Source of the DNA: Hyaloraphidium curvatum SAG 235-1
Taxonomy: Eukaryota; Fungi; Monoblepharomycota
Reading direction: 5' to 3'
Length of the DNA stretch: 64,000 bases
Assembly: GCA_025558095.1 (NCBI GenBank)
Contig: JAIVFI010000012.1
Span: 682,001-746,000 of the forward strand
Shown here: positions 4,155 through 15,200 of the stretch, piece by piece
How the letters are laid out: the number at the start of each line of letters is the position of its first letter
Position numbering within the stretch: position 1 is the first letter of the stretch
Translations under genes and position numbers: made by a program
Notes under the pieces: generated by a model
Databases searched by the model: none
What the model was told of the DNA's origin: nothing
Seen by the model: only the letters and a program-made list of their open reading frames with translations

Positions 4155-5214
4155 ATGAAGAGGTTTTGCGCCGGCCGCTCGACATCTCTCTGGGCCAGGA
4201 CGGCACGGACGGAAGAAGCCACGTCACTGGGCTGCGGGCGGGGCGGCGGCGACCGCTCGGGCACCAGCGCCACTGAAGCGAACGGGACGGCGGCGTTTGA
4301 GGATGCTGCCGCACACAGTGCAGACGATCTCAGTTGCGCCGGATGGCCTGGGACTGGGCGCCCGGCTTCTAGATTGAAAGCGGACGCGGGCGGGAACGGG
4401 GCGAGGGGACTTGGCTGCACCCACATCGGCACGGACCTGCTCCGCTGCGCCCGGTGCGGTCTCGCGGGGTACTGCTCGCGCTTCTGCCAGGTCCACGACT
4501 GGGGGAGGCACAAGCTGCGATGCGGACCCGGAGGGGCGAAGATCCGCGGGCTATCGGCCACGGCGCAGCCTCCCAAACCGTGCGCGGAAGGGTGCGCATA
4601 CCTTACCCCGAGCGACGCCGTCCCTGACGATGATTTCCGAGCGTGGAAGCAGGGGATGGCGGAGAGGCGGTCGGCTGCTGGGCACGGTTCTTCGTCGGTG
4701 GTCCAAATGGTGCACGGGGCCCGTCGCCTTCAACGCCGAAACGCTGATCAACATTTTCGACAAGACTCTTAGCTTGACGGGGAAGTAATACGTAGGGCGT
4801 ATGTCTGGAAACTGCGATTCCTCAACTTCTATGGCGATCGGCCCTCAGGATGTCCCGGGCGTCCCTGCTCCGCCACGCACATCCTCGAAACCCGAATGAC
4901 TCCACAGAACCACACACCCAAACCGCCGGAAACGGCGTCAAAACCCCGTTCAATCGCTTCCTCGGACGTGTCGCGGCATGGCCGAGCCCGCACGGTGGCG
5001 GAGGCGGCCGCGCTTGTCAGCGCAGGAAAGCGCTGGCGACGTAGAGCAAGATCGCTCCGTAGCTCAGTGGCTTCGAGTATCGGTTGCGGGCCTTCGCACG
5101 ACACCAAGACTGCGGGTAGACGGCGCAGAGTTGGAGGAGTTCGGTAGAGATTCGGGCTCATCCGTTACAGGTAGGTATAGCACTCCCTCGTGCTCCGCCT
5201 CCGCCGAATACTAG
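4155..5214 (+). pseudogene. Degenerate MYND zinc-finger gene
   Basis: CARCGLAGYCSRFCQVHDWGRHKLRC is a MYND finger. Downstream coding-like sequence is broken by frameshifts and stops. Confidence 0.55.
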
Positions 5215-6454: not shown

Positions 6455-7260
6455 CTCGCATCGGTTCCGAACCTGATGACTCCCGCCGCCGCCGCTTCCG
6501 CACCCGCACCGGCAGCATGCCGATGTTATTGTCGGCGGCGGCCGCGGCCATTGCGGAGGGACCTGCCTGGCCCGCAAAAGCGCGCCCGGACCGCCCAGTG
6601 ACTGTCTCGCCGAGCTCGAGCCGCAAGCCGACGGCGGTGCGAGAGTCAGAGCACCGGGCCGTTCCGGTGCTTCCCTGGTCCTCGATGGCGCCGTCGGCGT
6701 GCTCCCACTGCTTTTGCTGGACGCGGCGGGCAGCTCACTCGGACGCGGGGCTTCTCTCTCTCGTGCGGGCATCCGGCAGCCGGCGCAGAGCCCTGCGACG
6801 GAGCGTTGGCGGATGCTGATGCTTCGTTGGGGGCCGCCCGCCGGCAGCTGGCCATGTTATTCCGAGGATCTCTTGGGACGCGGCGGCGGTGACGTGGACC
6901 GACACCGGCGCCGCGCATCGTGGGCCGACTGGGAGAATCATCAATGCTGCCGTGACGGGCTCAGTCTGCGCAGCGTCGGATGGGACAAGCCGGCCTGGAT
7001 CGCCGGCCGCTTGGTACCGGCTCGGACGAGCGAGGCGGCTGCGGTAGGGGACCGGACCACCGGCGCCGCATGCCACGGGCTCGTCCGCGGCATTCCAGAG
7101 GATGCCGCTAGAGCCCTTTAAAGCGTGCGGCGCGGGGACGAAAAGCGGGGCCGTCTGCAGTTTCGGCGGCTTCCCAGTACTCAACCCGGGCAGGGCGATC
7201 CGAGCTTGCGGCGCCGTCGTTCTGCGGATGGGCAACATGCTGCTCAAAGACCGGCACGCT
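6455..7260. repeat. Leader plus hairpin-unit array, copy 1 (~4 units)
   Basis: Leader blocks are shared with 10360-10800. Left arms GGACCG(G)AC..CCGGCGCCGC occur at ~6896 and ~7048, with degenerate units at ~6775 and ~7197. Inner stem example: GCGGCATTC/GGATGCCGC. Confidence 0.8.
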
Positions 7261-7369
7261 GGCCATGTGGATGATCGATGATTGATACGACCACTTCCGC
7301 CTCCAGATTGCGACACCGTCAAGTCAGATGCACGGCGGTCGTCCCACGCTCTTTCCGCCGCTGGTTCCC

Positions 7370-7960
7370 TCACGCACCCCCGAGGTTGATCGAGATCCCC
7401 CTCCCCAGCTTCCGCCCGAACGCCAGCGCGACCCACAGATCGAAGATCCCGTCCACGAGCGGCGCCTTGTCGATCCCGCCCACGCGCACGGGCCTGAACC
7501 CGCACTCGGCGATCAGCTGCTCCGCCGCCGCCTCGGCCGCCGGCTCGGCGGCGTAGAACAGGTCGCACTTGACCGACCCGTCAGGAGCGGGGGCGGCGAT
7601 GGTCTCGGCGGCGACGGTGTTGAACGCGCGCACGACGAGCGCGCCGGGGGCCGCCTCGGCGATGGCCTTGGCGATGTTTGCAACGGTCTTCTTGGTGTCG
7701 TTGGCAGGCAGGACGACCGTCTTCCCGGCGAGCAGCGCCGCGAGCTCCTTTGCGGAATCGACCGCCGCGCCGCCCGGGATGGCCAGCGCGACGGCCTCGC
7801 TGTCCGCCACGGCGTCGACGACCGCGCGCACGGGGACCCCGTCCTGCTCGTTCTCGCCCTCGGCGTGCCGCGAGCCGAGGATGACGGAGTGCCCGGCTGC
7901 GAGCCAGTGTCCGGCGAGCGCGCGCGCGATGTGGCCGGTGCCGACGATGGCGATCTTCAT
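7370..7960 (-). CDS. NADP oxidoreductase, F420-dependent-like (NAD(P)-binding) family; intronless
   Basis: MKIAIVGTGHIARALAGHW...VILGSR, VVRAFNT and GFRPVRVGG motifs. Confidence 0.85.
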   Translation of the reverse strand: MKIAIVGTGHIARALAGHWLAAGHSVILGSRHAEGENEQDGVPVRAVVDAVADSEAVALAIPGGAAVDSAKELAALLAGKTVVLPANDTKKTVANIAKAIAEAAPGALVVRAFNTVAAETIAAPAPDGSVKCDLFYAAEPAAEAAAEQLIAECGFRPVRVGGIDKAPLVDGIFDLWVALAFGRKLGRGISINLGGA

Positions 7961-8738
7961 TCCGGCGGCGGGAGGGCGGGCGGGGCGGGCGGGTGCGGTG
8001 TGGAGTGCGGCGAAGGCGGGGAGTGTTGGATGGTCGGAGGGAGGGCGATATATATCGGAGAGGCGGATTATGAGAGAGTGCGGTGGGTGCGGTGGCTGGT
8101 TCACGGTCTGGACCCGGCCCAGCTCCGAGCGACAGCTCACCCATCACAACCCCGGCAACCTCCTCGCGGGTACGTCCCGCCCACGCAGCTGGCTCTGTTT
8201 CATTGGCCTCGAACCTTGCGGTGGTGGGAAGGAGTGTGTCGGCTTCGGGACGGGGGCGGCGGTCGGGGCCGGACTCGAGAGGCGCCTACGGCGGCGTCTG
8301 ATGGTGCCGCCGTGCATGGTCGTTGTGGACGCATTGGGCTTGGGCTACGGACGTGCGATTTCCAGGGGCAGACTGGCTGTGCGGACCGATAGCCGTCTGC
8401 ACCGCTCACCGTGCCACGGCGGCAAAGCGCCAAACAGACGCCTGGAGAGGGTAAGACTTTCCGAAAATAGGCGTAGTGGTTGCTAGGAGATGCTGTAGGA
8501 CGATATATGCCCCCGCCGGATAGACTGGCCAGCTTTGGGGCGCCGCAGCAATCGGATGTCGGACTTGCACACGGATCGGACGGACGAAACCGGGGTGGCG
8601 GCATTCTAATGTGCTGCCGAAGCCGCGCTGTACGGACTTCTCTATCTCCTGGTGGGCCCGTAAGGGCCACGCCCAGGCGAGGCCGACGAGAAGGGACTTG
8701 CGCGCTCTTCAGCACAAGCACGTCCGGCTAGACGCAGG

Positions 8739-10200
8739 ATGGAGACGGCCGACAAGCGCGTTTTCGAGGCTTTCGAGCAGCGTTTTACTAATGCGGAATG
8801 GCTCTGCTTGTTCCCCGAGGGGCTCAAGGACCCGGGGCCCCTCGACGCGCCGTTGCCTCCCGACCCTGCCGCGGATCTCCGCATGGTTTCTCCCGTCACG
8901 CGTGCGACGCTGGTCCGCGAGCTGCGCCCGGAGTCGCTGCCCGCGGCGGCCGCGGTGGCGGTGCAGACCGCGCTGGTGCCGCACTCTGCACTTCTGGTGC
9001 CGTGGATTCTGGCCGGGTCCGCGGGCATCGCGGTCGTCACAATCGCCGCGTTGTTCGGCAACGCCGTTCTGGGCGTGTTTGGGACGCCGCAAATGGCCGC
9101 GGGCATCGCCGCCGTCCTGTTCTACGCCGTGCTCAGCGGCGTGGCCGGCTCGACCACCGTGCTCCCCACACTCCTTACGCGCCACGCCGCGCCCTCGCAG
9201 AGGCCGCGCGACGCCGACGCCAGCTCGCACCCGTACGCGCCCATCGCGCGCTGGCTGCAGCTCAGGCGCTTCGCGGATGGCACGGAACCCACGCGCCTCC
9301 TCGCGCACGACCCGCGGGACAAGTTGTGCCCCTGTCCGGACCCCGCGTGCGCAGGAGGGCTGCCGGCCGCCGCCGGGTACTGGCGCACAGCCGAGTTCGT
9401 CGTCAGGGTGCTCGCGGTCTACGCCCTCTACTTCTCTCTGTTCTACACCGCCTTCGTCACGCTCGGCGGCGTGATCTGGCACTCGTGGTGGGGCATAGCC
9501 GCCTCCACGTTCGCCCTCATCAGCACCTCTGGCTTCGCCGCCTTCGCCATCGCCCTCCGCTTCGGCGGGAACCCCCCAGCGCGGCGCCTCCTCTTCCGCC
9601 TGCGGCACCGCGCCCTCGTCCTGTGCCTCCGCTCCATGCTGGACCACTACCGCCTCGCCCCGCACGACGCCGGCGAGAAACCTCCCTGCGACAAATCCTA
9701 CCTCGCCCTGCACGCCGCCCTCTCCGTCTCGTGGGACGATCGCACGGTGCCCATGACCTCGGCCGGCTTCATGGCGGTGTACTTTGCCGGTGCCGCGGTC
9801 GGAGGGATCATCAACGCCACCGCGGGGTCGTGCGTCCCCGTGTGGTGCTTCCTCCTCCTCGCGCAGATGCTGGTTGCCGTCACGGTCGACATGGTCAATG
9901 CCGCGGCGACCAACGAGGAGATCTCGGCGGCCGCGGAGCTGTACCTCCGCGCGGGGGCGGAGCTCCAGCTGCTGCTCCCGTTCCACGCCGACCCCGAGCG
10001 CACCGAAATGGCGTCCCGCGCGGCGGGGCTGGGGATGTTTGCCAACGCGGGGGGGAGGAAGCCCAGGTTGGCGCGTGGCAGTCGATTTCGGGGTCGTGCG
10101 GACGGTCCTGGTGACGGCCTTCACGGTGTTCATCGGGTTGTGGACGCTGCTCAGGTCGGCAGGGGTGGACGTGGTGATGGATATGGCGTGCAGGGGGTGA
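8739..10200 (+). pseudogene. 7TM family member 1 (GRL/DUF3537-like), with a frameshift at a G-run near 10050 (real lesion or assembly error)
   Basis: HDPRDKLCPCPDPAC motif and hydrophobic helices. The family C-terminus (GWRVAVDFGVVRTVLVTAFTVFIGLWTLLRSAGV) lies in a different frame. Confidence 0.75.
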
Positions 10201-10359
10201 TGCGTGTCTTTCCGAGCAAATTGAGCGCGGGGGTTCGTCTCCGCCAGCTCACCAATCAACCCCCGCTCATTGCCCTCGTTCCGTGCCCACGGGGACGCCC
10301 TGCGCTGCCCACGAACGGCAGCGCACTCTTAGCATCGCTCTTTACAGTGATGCGGGGAA

Positions 10360-12100
10360 ACGCGGTCGGGTTCGGACGGGCGGAACCGGGCTGGGGAGGC
10401 ACCTTCGACTCCGAGGGCACGGGCCGGGATGCGGCGGCCGGGGAAGCTTCCGACCTCGACACCGGTGGCACCCCGATGTCCATTGTCGAAAATTACAGCC
10501 CGGCCGCAGAACTACCGGACCCGTCGAGCAGCGCCGCACGCGGACCGGACCGATGACTGTCTCGCCCTCTCGAACAAGGCATCGGTGGCACAGAGGCAGA
10601 GCGCCGGAAGTTCCGGTGCCCTCTCCTCTGTAGACTGTCGTCGGCATGCTCCGAGCTGTTTCGCAGGACGCCGGAGGGGACCTCGGACGCGGGGCTTCTC
10701 GCGCGGGCAGGGGACCGATTGGGCAGCAGCCGGCCCGGAACTCCGCAGCGCAGCGTTGGCATGGGCCGACGCCAACCCTTTAGGCACTCAGATCGGACCG
10801 GCAGCTGGGAGACCCGGTCGGACTCGGGACTGTTCGAAACGGACGGCGTGAGGACACGTCATCGGGCTTCCAGGCAGCGGAGCGGATGGGGCGCCGGCGC
10901 CGCGCAAGCTTTCCGGTCGGCGGCATTCGGAGACGCTGCCAATCTTCTAGGTTGTGCGGCGCCAAATGGTCTGGGAAATGGGGTTTCGCCTGGTCGCGAA
11001 AAGCCGGCGGACGGATGCACGGATGCGTGGGACCGGACCGCCGGCGCCGCGCATTGCGTTCGGGTCGGCGGGGTTTCTTGATGCTGCCATGGCCAGAGTA
11101 TGCAACGCGCGGTGCTACAGGGCCCGAGAAGCTTTCGAAACGCAGCCAGGGACGTCGGAAGTGGTGGTGGACGATTGATCGACGGGACCGGACGACGGCG
11201 CCGCGCATTGCGGCACTTCGGCAGCTTCTGATGACGCTTCCCCACGGAGCTCCCTTGCGCGGCGTCGGATGACCTGGGAAAGGGATACATTGCTCGCCGG
11301 AACCAGACGCACGGTTGCGTGGGACGCGACAGGATCGCCGGCGTCGCACTTCTTCCGCTGACAGGCGTCGTTCCCTGATGATGCCTCTGTAGAACTTTGG
11401 TCGCATAGCGCGGCGCCGGATGGCCGGGGAATCGTTCATGACCAGAGATCAAAGATTGCGCTCAATCTGGACTGGGCATGAGAACGGGATCGGATCGGAC
11501 CGCGGGCGCCGCGCATCCACCGCGGACGGGCCGCGTCTGTAGATGCTGCCAGCACATCTGTGAGGATGTCGCGGCCCCGGCCGGGCCTGAATCGGACCGG
11601 GGCGAGCGGCGCTTTGCGAGTCCTGGACGAAGGACGAGCGTGCGAGGTGAGGATGGATCGCAGGCGCCGTGCCCTGCTGAAAAGCTGGCAGCTTTTGGAT
11701 GATCCTGCCAGGGAGTCCAGTTGCCGCTCGGGTGGACTGCATCTACCTGGCGTCGGCGGCATTTTGGGATGCCGCGGAGGGCCGGGATGGGGTCGTGCGG
11801 CTTCCCAGACGGACCAGGGCGATTGGGACGCGGACGGGACCGGACCGCGGGCGCCGCAACTCCACCGCTCATGGGCAGCATGTGCGCGTGATGCTGTCCT
11901 CCCATCCGTCGGTGCGGCGCCTTACGGCCTGGGATCTGTCGCGAAGGCTCTCTCGACCTCCGACGGACCGGACGTGCGGACGCGCAGATCCAAGGGGCCG
12001 GACCGCAGGAGCCTTCTCTCTCTGGCGACAGGCGACATTTGTACGATGCCGCCAGATTTACTGGCAACGGGCGGCGCCGGATGGCCGGAGATCGGTTGGG
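10360..12100. repeat. Leader plus hairpin-unit array, copy 2 (~9 units, period ~145-185 bp)
   Basis: Left arms at ~10884, 11029, 11184, 11328, 11493, 11651, 11836 and 11994. Each is followed by an inner stem (GGCAGC-like...GATGCTGCC-like) and usually a right arm GCGGCGCCGGATGGCC-like. Confidence 0.85.
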
Positions 12101-12278: not shown

Positions 12279-15200
12279 ATGGCGAAGGGATTTCGAGCCC
12301 CCGAACAACGAAACCGCCAGGTGGCACCGTTCCCCAAGCTGCTCTCCCCCAGCAAGAGGCGGCGCCGGTCCGGGCTCGACCAGCTGCTCGCGTACGCGCG
12401 CGAGGGCGGCGTCGAGCCCGGCCGGGACGGCGAGCGGCGGCGCACGCGCGCGGTGGGCGCCGTCGACGCGGCGGAGGTGCCGCCAAACGTGGGGCGCGCG
12501 CGGCAGCCTCTCAGCCCCACGCCCGTGTCGCCGCCGCCCAACGGAGTTCTGAGAGATGGGGCGGGGAGGCGGGGAGGAGTGGATGGGGCGCCGGGGGGCG
12601 TTTCCTTGAATGCCGCGCCCGTCGTCAGGAGGAGGCGCCGCGCGGCCTCGGACGCGTCGACCGACTCGGAGAGCGACGCCGCCGAGCCGCAGTACGAGAC
12701 CGAGGAGGAGGACGAGGGCGTCGACTTCGAGGACGCCCTGTCGACGACGCCCGGCAGGGGCACGCCCGCCCCCGCCACGCCCACTTTCTCGGCGCCGCAG
12801 ATCTCGACCACGCCGACGGTGCGCGAGCCGCCTTCAGTGGCGGCGAACTCGCCGCGGCCCGCCGGGCCGCCGACGCCGCACTTGCCGATAACTGCTCCCG
12901 GGATGGCCGGGAGCCCAGCCGGCATCCCTGCCGGGGGACCCATCGGACAACCGGCGCCCCCCGGCCCCGCCAACCCTTCCCCCGCCCTGCCCCCCGGCCT
13001 CACCACGACCCCCATCTACCGCGGCCGCGGCCGTGGTCGCGGACGAGGGCGAGGCAGAGGCAGAGGCCGCGGCAGGGGCGCCTCCCTCTCGGTCCCTCGC
13101 CCCCCCTTGGGCCCCATGACCACCCCCCACCCCCCGCTGGCATCCCGCGGCAGGGGCGGCAAGCTCCCACTCTCCCTCCCCCCGCTCTCGATCCCGCACC
13201 CCCTTCCGAACCTGCACCGTCCAACACCTCTGGGGACCGGCACGGGCACGGCCACCGCTACCTTCCCCTCCCTCTCCGCCACCCCCACAACACCACCCAG
13301 CGACACCCCCCGCCTCCCCGGCCCCGTCGTACCCCCTCCCCCCACCCACGCTCCGCAGGTGCAGCAGCAGAGGGGCGTGATGCTCCCCGGCCCTGTGGCC
13401 TTCCCCCTGGGACCGAGGAGGAAGAAGGTGGTGCAGCCTGTGCGGAGGGAGTACGCCACCCGCTCGCGTCACGATCCCGCGGGCGGGCCGGAACAACCCC
13501 CCGCACCCGCGCCCGGAGGGGCAGGCGCCCCGCAGCGCTCGGCGAGCGTGTCGCTGCCGCTCCCCTCGCACGGCATCACCCTCTCCGAGCTCCCGCCCGA
13601 CCTGGACGCGCAGCTGGAACGCCGCCGCACCCTTTCGTCGGTGGACTACGGCCGCGGCCGGGCGTGGGGCGGCGCGGGAAAGACGCCCCCCGACGGGCTG
13701 TTCCCCAGCCCCGAGTTCCCGCCCGCGGGCGCGGCGCCCGAAAGGGGGGCCAGGCACGCGGCGGTGGCGGGCAAACCCGCCCCGGGGGGCGGCGCGAAGC
13801 CGCCGCCCGCGCACGCGAGGGAAGTGCCGGGGCCGCCGCCGCGCCCGGTGCCGCCGCGCCTGCCGCCGCGCCTGGTGCCGGCGGGACGGACCTGCGGGGT
13901 GCTGCTGTTCCGGGTCGAGCGGAGGAGGGACAGGCCGAAACCCGCGCCCGGACCCGTCGCGGTCGTCGAGCACGTTCCGGGGCCCGCGACGCCGGTCTCG
14001 GTGCCGGGTGCGAGGGCGGAGCTGGACACGCCGGCGACGGCTACGGGGACGCCCGGGACGGGGGACACGCAGGCGGCGACGGCCGAGAGCCAGGGCGGGA
14101 GGACGGAAGCCAGCGCGTCGGGGACGCCGGAAGGGACGCCCGAGAGGGTCGGGACCCCCGAGGTGGGTGGCCGCGGTGCGGGGCGGGGGAGGGACAGGCT
14201 GATGCGCCGCGCGCAGGTGGTGATGCCCGAGGTCGGCGCGTCGCCGCGCGAGGCGGAGGGGAGGCACGCCGCGGAGGACGGGGCGCCCGTGCCGAAGGAT
14301 GGGGAGGCGGAGACGGAGGACGCGAAGATGGACGAAAAGCCGCCGACCGCCGCCGCAGCCGAGGAACGGGAGGGGCAGCTTGTGGCGGAGGGGCAGCCCG
14401 GGCCGGCGGAGGAGCAGCCCGCGGCGGAGGAGCAGCCCGCGGCTGAGGAGCAGCCCGCGGTGGAGGAGCTGCCCGCGGCGGAGGAGCTGCCCGCGGCGGA
14501 GGAGCTGCCCGCGGTGGAGGAAAAGACCGCGGCGCCGGAAGAGCCCGAATCCGCTGGGGAAGCGAAAGCCACCGCTGAGCCGGCGGACGAGGAGATGCCG
14601 GCCGCGGATCCCGCACCGGAGGAGCCTATGCCCGCGCCTTCTTCCCTGGAGGCACCGCAGGACGTTGCCGCTGCGCAGGAGGTTGAAGGCGGTGCGCACG
14701 ATGACGCGATGCAGGTCGACGAGGCGCCCGCGGAGGATGGCAAGCTGGACGCGGAACCGAAGCCGGACGGGGCGTCGGCGCCTGCCGAGGCCGCACAGGT
14801 GGCCAAGCAGGAGCAAATGCCCGAGACGGGACGGGAGGCGACGCCCCGGGAACCGACCCCGCCGGCGCAGGCTGATCCAGCGCAGGAGGTGCCCGTCGAG
14901 CAGGAGGCGCCGGCCGAGCAGGCGCTTCCGGTCGCGCAGGACGGACCGCCGCCCGCGGTCGAAGCGGCGCCCGCTGCCACGTCGCTGCCCGTGCCGGCAC
15001 CCACGCCCGTGCCGGCGGTACCGGGAGGGCCGCTGACGCTCGCTCCGATCGTGACCAAGAAACGTGAGTTGCCCCTCCCGCCTCCGCGTTGCGACACCCG
15101 CTCATTTCGGCCCCAGCAACCAAGATCATCCGCCCCATCATCAAGCGCGTCATCCCCACGCGCTCCGCGACCGCGGCGCAGGAGGCGCTGAACCCGCCGC

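What the first reader, a model, noticed from the sequence alone, without database searches (positions are those of the whole stretch)
10720..12100. Tandem array of ~155-bp two-stem hairpin units with conserved stems and two variable segments (guide-RNA-array-like)
Seen in sequence: about 9 units share one layout. It runs left arm GGACCGGACCGCCGGCGCCGCGCA, ~12-14 nt variable, an inner stem-loop, ~13-21 nt variable, right arm TGCGCGGCGCCGGATGGCC, then a ~50-70 nt linker. The outer arms are complementary (CCGGCGCCGC/GCGGCGCCGG). Inner stems differ in sequence yet keep pairing, often with G-U: AGGCGTCGTT/GATGATGCCT (~11363), GGCCGCGTCT/AGATGCTGCC (~11529), GGGCAGCAT/ATGCTGTCC (~11873). Spacings (~145, 155, 144, 165, 158, 185, 158) are mostly not multiples of 3, so the array is not a coding repeat. 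Inference: selection acts on RNA or ssDNA structure. Candidates are a polycistronic small-RNA or guide precursor (the stem/internal-loop/stem shape recalls H/ACA pockets, dual-spacer guide arrays or clustered pre-miRNAs), or dyad-symmetric sites spaced at nucleosome length. No effector protein is identifiable in the window.
Basis: partly seen in the sequence, partly recalled or inferred. Interest (0 to 1): 0.88.

Follow-up and report, generated by a model that had tools for sequence, protein, structure and literature searches.

The report
MicroRNA-like hairpin polycistrons in a chytrid
The aquatic fungus Hyaloraphidium curvatum carries at least 51 tandem RNA hairpins in six clusters whose measurements match animal microRNA precursors (a stem of about 11-13 pairs, then a fixed 22-nt arm with a freely varying 5' half), although it has no Drosha-type enzyme; whether they yield small RNAs or act as a new kind of guide is untested.

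Summary
The array is real: nine complete units plus one half unit at 10716-12091 (+). It is one of six related clusters over 60 kb of contig C12 of Hyaloraphidium curvatum (51 units parsed; the scan had noted the upstream clusters before). Each unit is basal stem / V1 / 9-bp apical stem-loop / V2 / basal stem. Selection acts on a single-stranded fold of one strand: G-U to A-C 81:28, not explained by mutation bias, with sense-only GGAC enrichment in linkers (116 vs 28). New here: V1 has a fixed length (12-14 nt in 38/51) while V2 is free (8-27). V1 plus the apical 5' strand is 21-24 nt in 43/51, with 49 different putative seeds. That is pri-miRNA geometry, and the genome has Dicer and three Argonautes. 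Best reading (0.45): polycistronic miRNA-like precursors with diversified 5' arms. Against it: no Drosha, several units have large open loops, no 5'-U bias, no targets found, no small-RNA data, transcription only suggested. H/ACA and TIGR/C-D membership fail; nucleosome phasing is unsupported. Live rival (0.25): an undescribed 13-nt internal-loop guide RNA.

The parts
10206..10308 (+). Upstream block homologous to the upstream region of sister cluster F (C12:664.5k, minus)
   Evidence: local alignment z=7.1
10427..10488 (+). Upstream block homologous to 6474-6534 in front of cluster B
   Evidence: local alignment z=5.3
10535..10700 (+). Structured leader: branched two-tier hairpin 10549-10650 (z -4.5) plus a conserved motif ending at 10698; found 4 times in the genome, all in these clusters
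10716..10816 (+). Unit A0 (alternative outer-stem type, paralogue of B0): basal 10729-39/10793-803, V1 10740-52, apical 10753-72, V2 10773-92
10884..10975 (+). Unit A1: V1 10907-18, apical 10919-40, V2 10941-52
11029..11128 (+). Unit A2: V1 11054-66, apical 11067-88, V2 11089-105; V1 and V2 largely paired
11184..11279 (+). Unit A3: V1 11208-19, apical 11220-41, V2 11242-55
11326..11430 (+). Unit A4: V1 11351-63, apical 11364-85, V2 11386-406; asymmetric, weakly paired loop
11492..11590 (+). Unit A5: V1 11516-28, apical 11529-50, V2 11551-67
11649..11743 (+). Unit A6 (degenerate outer stem): V1 11674-86, apical 11687-709
11742..11805 (+). Half unit A7: apical hairpin 11755-75 and a 3' arm, no 5' basal arm
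11835..11934 (+). Unit A8: V1 11861-73, apical 11874-98, V2 11899-910; open internal loop in the centroid structure
11990..12091 (+). Unit A9 (degenerate 5' basal arm; register set by hand): V1 12018-30, apical 12031-53, V2 12054-67
6581..7147 (+). Paralogous cluster B: leader (72% identical over 181 nt) plus units B0-B2; lies between two minus-strand genes, so it is not a UTR of a sense mRNA
4247..4354 (+). Lone A-type unit C1
8598..8624 (+). Possible remnant (apical hairpin only); the region does not fold better than shuffles

Best explanation
The array is one of at least six paralogous, probably Pol II-transcribed polycistrons of microRNA-like precursor hairpins. Shown: each unit folds on the sense strand into a basal stem of about 9-13 bp, a 13-nt variable 5' segment, a 9-bp apical stem with a short loop, a length-free 3' segment and the closing arm, between purine-rich GGAC-containing single-stranded linkers; the stems are under structural selection; units multiplied by local duplication and diversified mostly in the loop segments. 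Inferred: an RNase III-type cut at the top of the basal stem (by the single Dicer or an unidentified factor, since Drosha is absent) and a second cut at the apical loop release a 21-24-nt 5'-arm RNA (V1 plus apical strand). It loads into one of three Argonautes, and the variable V1 supplies a different seed per unit (49 seeds in 51 units). V2 is the discarded passenger side, so its length and sequence drift. Targets are probably mRNAs or transposons bound by partial pairing.
For: V1 12-14 nt vs V2 8-26 nt in an unsupervised parse with equal length ranges allowed (32/39; Levene p=0.001). V1+apical strand 21-24 nt in 43/51, against 15-37 nt on the 3' side. [quoted passage not shown] Conservation order is stems > V1 > V2, with V2 at or near shuffle level in three of four families, as for guide vs passenger arms. 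Own V1-V2 pairing beats swapped pairs overall (p=0.015) and 24/36 units pair at least 16 of 22 nt. G-U:A-C 81:28, while C>T is lower than G>A at unpaired sites. One Dicer and three Argonautes are present. Contigs of a probable RNA run cover 10648-12032 and 6621-7473. Seed-divergent tandem miRNA families confined to one locus are known in mammals (PMC6445303).
Against: No Drosha-type enzyme: the three extra RNase III proteins group with short single-domain bacterial-type enzymes (quick tree, SH-aLRT 88), and fungi show no known two-step dicing (PMC9757828). In the window's own family V1-V2 pairing is no better than swapped (p=0.19-0.29), and A0, A4, A8, A9 and C1 have large open or asymmetric loops. 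No 5'-U bias at the assumed register (C16, U9, A7, G4). Basal stems are more conserved than the putative seed, the reverse of most miRNA families (my knowledge). No target signal in 238 kb or by genome BLAST. No small-RNA data; the run's RNA status is a guess. Three differences in a soil read set fall 1 in V2 and 2 in stems, where they break pairs (depth 2, may be errors).
Confidence: 0.45

Rival explanations
1. Undescribed guide-RNA class. Units are cut out whole (80-100 nt); a protein clamps the two conserved stems and presents the fixed-length 13-nt V1 as a guide in an internal loop for RNA modification, editing or DNA/transposon recognition, with V2 as a flexible tether or second guide. 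It would work like C/D, tigRNA or bridge-RNA loops without their boxes.
For: Fixed V1 length between two sequence-conserved stems; open loops in several units; stems conserved in sequence within families, as protein-binding sites are; nearly all V1 distinct.
Against: No effector nearby and no extra Nop-domain gene. V1 segments share ancestry (z 2.7-6.8), so they were not acquired. Many units pair V1 with V2 almost fully (B0, D4, EA2), which would hide a guide. No enrichment for H/ACA-like or TIGR-like bipartite targets in 238 kb. rRNA/snRNA targets were not tested.
Confidence: 0.25
2. Unprocessed structured long non-coding RNA: a repeated protein-binding scaffold or decoy (for a dsRNA-binding protein, Dicer/Argonaute or a GGAC-reading protein), where V1 length only sets the spacing of two helices.
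For: Continuous 1.4-kb contig over the array; strong strand-specific GGAC enrichment in linkers; no targets found; V1 only weakly conserved.
Against: Does not explain why V1 plus the apical strand lands at 21-24 nt across different stem families while V2 is free, nor why V1 is more conserved than V2.
Confidence: 0.2
3. DNA-level or neutral feature: decayed satellite, tandem MITE-like inverted repeats, cruciforms or nucleosome-spaced dyads.
For: Units arose by tandem duplication; spacing is 135-190 nt in three clusters; transcription is not proven.
Against: G-U excess on one strand per cluster, following cluster orientation and not explained by mutation bias; double changes keep pairing 30:8 (the parse rewards pairing, so an upper bound); spacing about 95 nt in cluster E; no dispersed copies in the genome; TRF finds no satellite. 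Single-stranded DNA hairpins are not excluded by G-T tolerance alone.
Confidence: 0.07
4. Divergent H/ACA-like or C/D-like snoRNA cluster guiding rRNA/snRNA modification.
For: Stem-pocket-stem outline; polycistronic snoRNA clusters are common (my knowledge).
Against: ACA/AGA/H box 14-16 nt from the upper stem in 1/51; no box C in any unit; the length constraint is on the 5' side of the loop, the opposite of H/ACA; no Rfam match.
Confidence: 0.03

Closest known systems
Animal polycistronic pri-miRNA clusters with seed divergence (e.g. X-linked spermiR/miR-506 family)
   Same: Tandem-duplicated hairpins confined to one locus; about 13-nt lower stem plus about 22-nt arm to the loop; divergent seeds; single-stranded flanks (PMC7174388, PMC6445303).
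   Different: No Drosha/DGCR8-type enzyme found; much larger asymmetric loops; lower and upper stems conserved in sequence while the putative seed varies; hairpins only 50-70 nt apart; products unobserved.
Fungal mi/milRNA hairpins
   Same: Fungal, intergenic, short animal-like hairpins; Dicer and Argonaute present; meets the minimal fold criteria of PMC9757828 in most units.
   Different: That survey never mentions clusters or chytrids (0 text hits); here 51 or more paralogous hairpins with a fixed ruler; no sRNA-seq confirmation.
TIGR stem-loop arrays, C/D snoRNAs, IS110 bridge RNA
   Same: Tandem units with two variable segments inside an internal loop closed by palindromic stems, several sub-arrays (PMC12045711).
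   Different: No box C/D motifs, no adjacent Nop-domain effector, spacers asymmetric (13 vs 8-27 nt instead of two of 8-12 nt) and related by descent.
H/ACA guide RNAs
   Same: Lower stem, internal loop, upper stem-loop.
   Different: No H/ACA box at 14-16 nt; length constraint on the wrong side of the loop.

Membership tests
miRNA / milRNA precursor | Unbranched hairpin, no secondary stems, limited unpaired bases in the duplex | tested here: inconclusive
   24/36 units pair at least 16 of the putative 22 nt; others have large loops
miRNA / milRNA precursor | About 13-nt lower stem plus about 22-nt arm to the apical loop | tested here: met
   V1+apical strand 21-24 nt in 43/51; basal stems 9-13 bp (PMC7174388)
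miRNA / milRNA precursor | Precise 20-24-nt mature and star reads with 2-nt overhangs | not testable with these tools
   only contigs of one possible RNA run were available
miRNA / milRNA precursor | Dicer and Argonaute in the genome | tested here: met
canonical (Microprocessor) miRNA | Drosha-type double RNase III enzyme | tested here: not met
   RNase III census, PDB search and quick tree; DGCR8 not searched
miRNA / milRNA precursor | 5'-U bias of the mature strand | tested here: inconclusive
   no bias at the assumed register, which is uncertain by 1-2 nt
miRNA / milRNA precursor | Complementary targets | tested here: inconclusive
   none above chance in 238 kb, 0.7% of the genome; no long exact match by genome BLAST
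TIGR-Tas array | [quoted passage not shown] | tested here: not met
   no eukaryotic-type box C in 51 units, scattered CUGA only; V2 8-27 nt; no short motif fixed on both sides of V2 in the parses
TIGR-Tas array | Adjacent Nop-domain Tas protein | tested here: not met
   3 Nop-domain genes, on C7, C10 and C19, none on C12
CRISPR/TIGR-type guide arrays | Spacers unrelated to each other (acquired) | tested here: not met
   V1 segments within a family are more alike than shuffles, z 2.7-6.8
H/ACA snoRNA | ACA/AGA or H box 14-16 nt from the upper stem | tested here: not met
   1 of 51
H/ACA or C/D snoRNA | Complementarity to rRNA/snRNA | not tested
Any Rfam family | Match at gathering score | tested here: not met

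The most novel reading that the evidence does not exclude
A categorically new eukaryotic guide-RNA system: at least 51 unit RNAs in which two sequence-conserved stems hold a fixed 13-nt guide for an unidentified effector, diversified by duplication and mutation rather than by spacer acquisition.
Probability: 0.25. Interest if true: 0.92.

Novelty: new variant of a known kind. Interest (0 to 1): 0.72.

Why it matters
If these are miRNA-like precursors, a chytrid-grade fungus without Drosha has independently built animal-style miRNA polycistrons with the same 13+22 ruler and about 50 different seeds. That bears directly on how often miRNA pathways arose and on whether fungi have two-step hairpin processing, which a 2022 survey lists as unsupported (PMC9757828). 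If they are instead whole-unit guides, they would be a new programmable RNA class in a eukaryote. One small-RNA library from a cultured strain separates the two readings, because the predicted products have exact coordinates.

Tried and rejected
Rfam at gathering and E-value thresholds: nothing real. tRNA scan, TRF, promoter/terminator scan: nothing. The covariance model of the A-type unit finds only its 13 training units in the genome; sister clusters were found through the leader motif and earlier notes, since their stems differ in sequence. Five off-C12 hits of a 13-nt motif were chance. Metagenome (2 scans) and viral (1 scan) pattern searches found no relatives, so there is no between-species covariation. 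Target searches were at chance: two full V1 matches against 1.37 expected, bipartite geometries, the neighbouring membrane-protein gene. An apparent best hit of a C46 RNase III to human Drosha came from summing two domains; per domain and in a tree it is bacterial-type. A K-turn reading of the GA-containing flank was considered by eye and dropped, as the register breaks the long stem. A coding repeat is excluded by stops in all frames. In one search four unit boundaries were corrected by hand and three poor units dropped; one search gives the uncorrected numbers. The FH and EC parses are rougher.

Full report
Setting. The window is C12:682001-746000 of a 31.9-Mb, 55-contig, intron-containing genome. 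A protein from this genome is 100% identical to an NCBI entry of Hyaloraphidium curvatum, an early-diverging aquatic fungus. The array is intergenic, between an intronless 438-aa gene without Pfam match (8798-10114) and a gene starting near 12279.

Observation. Nine complete units and one half unit lie at 10716-12091 on the + strand. Each has a basal stem of about 11-13 bp, a 5' variable segment V1, an apical stem of about 9 bp with a 3-9-nt loop, a 3' variable segment V2 and the closing arm, followed by a 45-70-nt linker. Apical stems start 144-187 nt apart and all six frames have stops. On the MAFFT alignment of 13 window units, 78% of cells pair against 73% in column shuffles (0/500) and 31-58% in slid controls, and 8 pairs show two-sided changes. 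This is not a phylogenetically corrected test. No Rfam family, tRNA or TRF repeat matches.

Extent. A 180-nt leader (10535-10700) is 72% identical to 6581-6756, which heads a second cluster of three units; a lone unit lies at 4247-4354. Further upstream blocks tie cluster A to B and to cluster F. Following earlier notes of the scan, I fetched the upstream contig and confirmed three more clusters: D (635.6-636.8 kb, minus), E (638.5-641.7 kb, plus, with a three-hairpin higher-order unit) and F (662.7-664.5 kb, minus, sharing the leader motif). Their stems differ in sequence, so the A-type model does not find them, but the layout is the same. The leader motif occurs exactly four times in the genome, all in these clusters. 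No relatives turned up in metagenome or viral collections. In all, 51 units were parsed.

Selection on a single strand. In stems, G-U outnumbers A-C 81 to 28 (32 to 10 in the window alone), always on the strand that defines each cluster. At consensus G-C pairs the ratio is 55:19 and at A-U pairs 12:4. At unpaired conserved sites C>T (0.07) is rarer than G>A (0.13), so strand-biased deamination does not explain it. Two-sided changes stay paired 30 times against 8, an upper bound because the parser rewards pairing. Linkers contain GGAC 116 times against 28 expected, and its complement 12 times. Mean pairwise identity is 0.66-0.94 in stems, 0.48-0.59 in V1 (above shuffles, z 2.7-6.8) and 0.39-0.46 in V2 (at shuffle level in three of four families).

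The ruler. With both segments allowed 7-28 nt, V1 came out at 12-14 nt in 32 of 39 units while V2 spread over 8-26 nt, uncorrelated with V1 (Levene p=0.001). With all families, V1 is 12-14 nt in 38/51. V1 plus the 5' strand of the apical stem is 21-24 nt in 43/51; the 3' equivalent runs 15-37 nt. The putative seeds are 49 different 7-mers in 51 units. [quoted passage not shown] The units reproduce these measures on the 5' arm only.

Is the loop a duplex or a pocket? Both occur. Own V1-V2 pairs beat swapped pairs over all families (p=0.015, driven by cluster D) but not in the window's family (p=0.19-0.29). B0, A2, A5, D4 and EA2 are nearly full hairpins; A0, A4, A8, A9 and C1 are open or strongly asymmetric. 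24 of 36 units pair at least 16 of the 22 nt. This is the main weakness of the miRNA reading and the main support for the guide reading.

Expression. One run, guessed to be RNA, gives contigs 10648-12032 and 6621-7473 that match clusters A and B. It has holes in neighbouring intergenic DNA and depths from 3 to over 300 among paralogous genes, which suggests RNA. No intron is spanned, contigs carry no strand, and a hole proves nothing, so transcription is suggested but not shown. Cluster B lies on + between two minus-strand genes, so it cannot be a sense UTR. A soil metagenome holds near-identical reads with three differences, two of which break stem pairs, at depth 2.

Machinery. The genome has three Argonautes, one Dicer and three further RNase III genes. 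The latter are single-catalytic-domain proteins that group with short bacterial-type enzymes rather than Drosha-type domains in a quick tree; one has an arginine-rich N-terminus suggesting mitochondrial import (my reading). There are three Nop-domain genes, the number expected for Nop56, Nop58 and Prp31 (my knowledge), none on C12.

Targets. None found. Genome BLAST with the array and with one unit returns only self (low sensitivity for short matches). In 238 kb held locally, full V1 matches were 2 against 1.37 expected, the best 22-mer identities equalled shuffles, and H/ACA-like and TIGR-like split sites were at chance. rRNA could not be retrieved.

Comparison. [quoted passage not shown] The H/ACA box rule holds in 1/51. 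A re-analysis of 1727 fungal hairpin loci describes short animal-like hairpins, reports no evidence for two-step dicing, and does not mention clusters or chytrids (PMC9757828). Mammalian spermiRs are a precedent for a locus-confined, seed-divergent tandem family (PMC6445303). The element works most like a miRNA polycistron, but cannot be filed as canonical miRNA (no Drosha) or as confirmed milRNA (no reads).

Verdict. A real, structurally selected, undescribed RNA family of at least 51 units. miRNA-like precursors 0.45; new whole-unit guide 0.25; unprocessed scaffold 0.2; DNA-level or neutral 0.07; snoRNA 0.03. Interest 0.72: either leading reading would surprise specialists and one experiment decides it, but products, targets, orthologues and firm transcription are all missing.

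Noticed in passing
G000:C46:11006-11254 (-), C46:17265-17510 (+), C7:115621-115854 (+); P0046, P0047, P0049: Species-specific trio of bacterial-type RNase III proteins with extra dsRBD-like repeats and no close relatives; candidate horizontal acquisitions, function unknown.
   Followed up: partly
window 7370-7960 (-): Intronless F420/NADP oxidoreductase-like gene (PF03807) whose listed relatives are 26-53% identical, mostly unnamed metagenome proteins; possible horizontal transfer. The contig over cluster B runs into its 3' end.
   Followed up: partly
window 8798-10114 (+): Intronless 438-aa hydrophobic protein without Pfam match; many paralogous contigs at 36-337x depth in run X1.
   Followed up: partly
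L011 6550-9700 (C12:638.5-641.7 kb): Cluster E repeats three different hairpin types in a 300-nt higher-order unit; all three keep the 13-14-nt V1.
   Followed up: yes
window 10245-10254 and 8129-8138: Shared short element that reads as a 5' splice site on the minus strand; the copy at 10245 lies in the block homologous to the start of cluster F.
   Followed up: no
window 10835-10843 and 11132-11140: Two linkers contain a Pol III B-box-like 9-mer; the other linkers do not.
   Followed up: no
L041:2876: V1 of unit A6 matches 13/13 (same sense) inside a C46 RNase III gene; within the total expected by chance.
   Followed up: yes
G000:C1:30336-259628: At least four dispersed full-length LSU rDNA copies on C1, 47-100 kb apart.
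   Followed up: no
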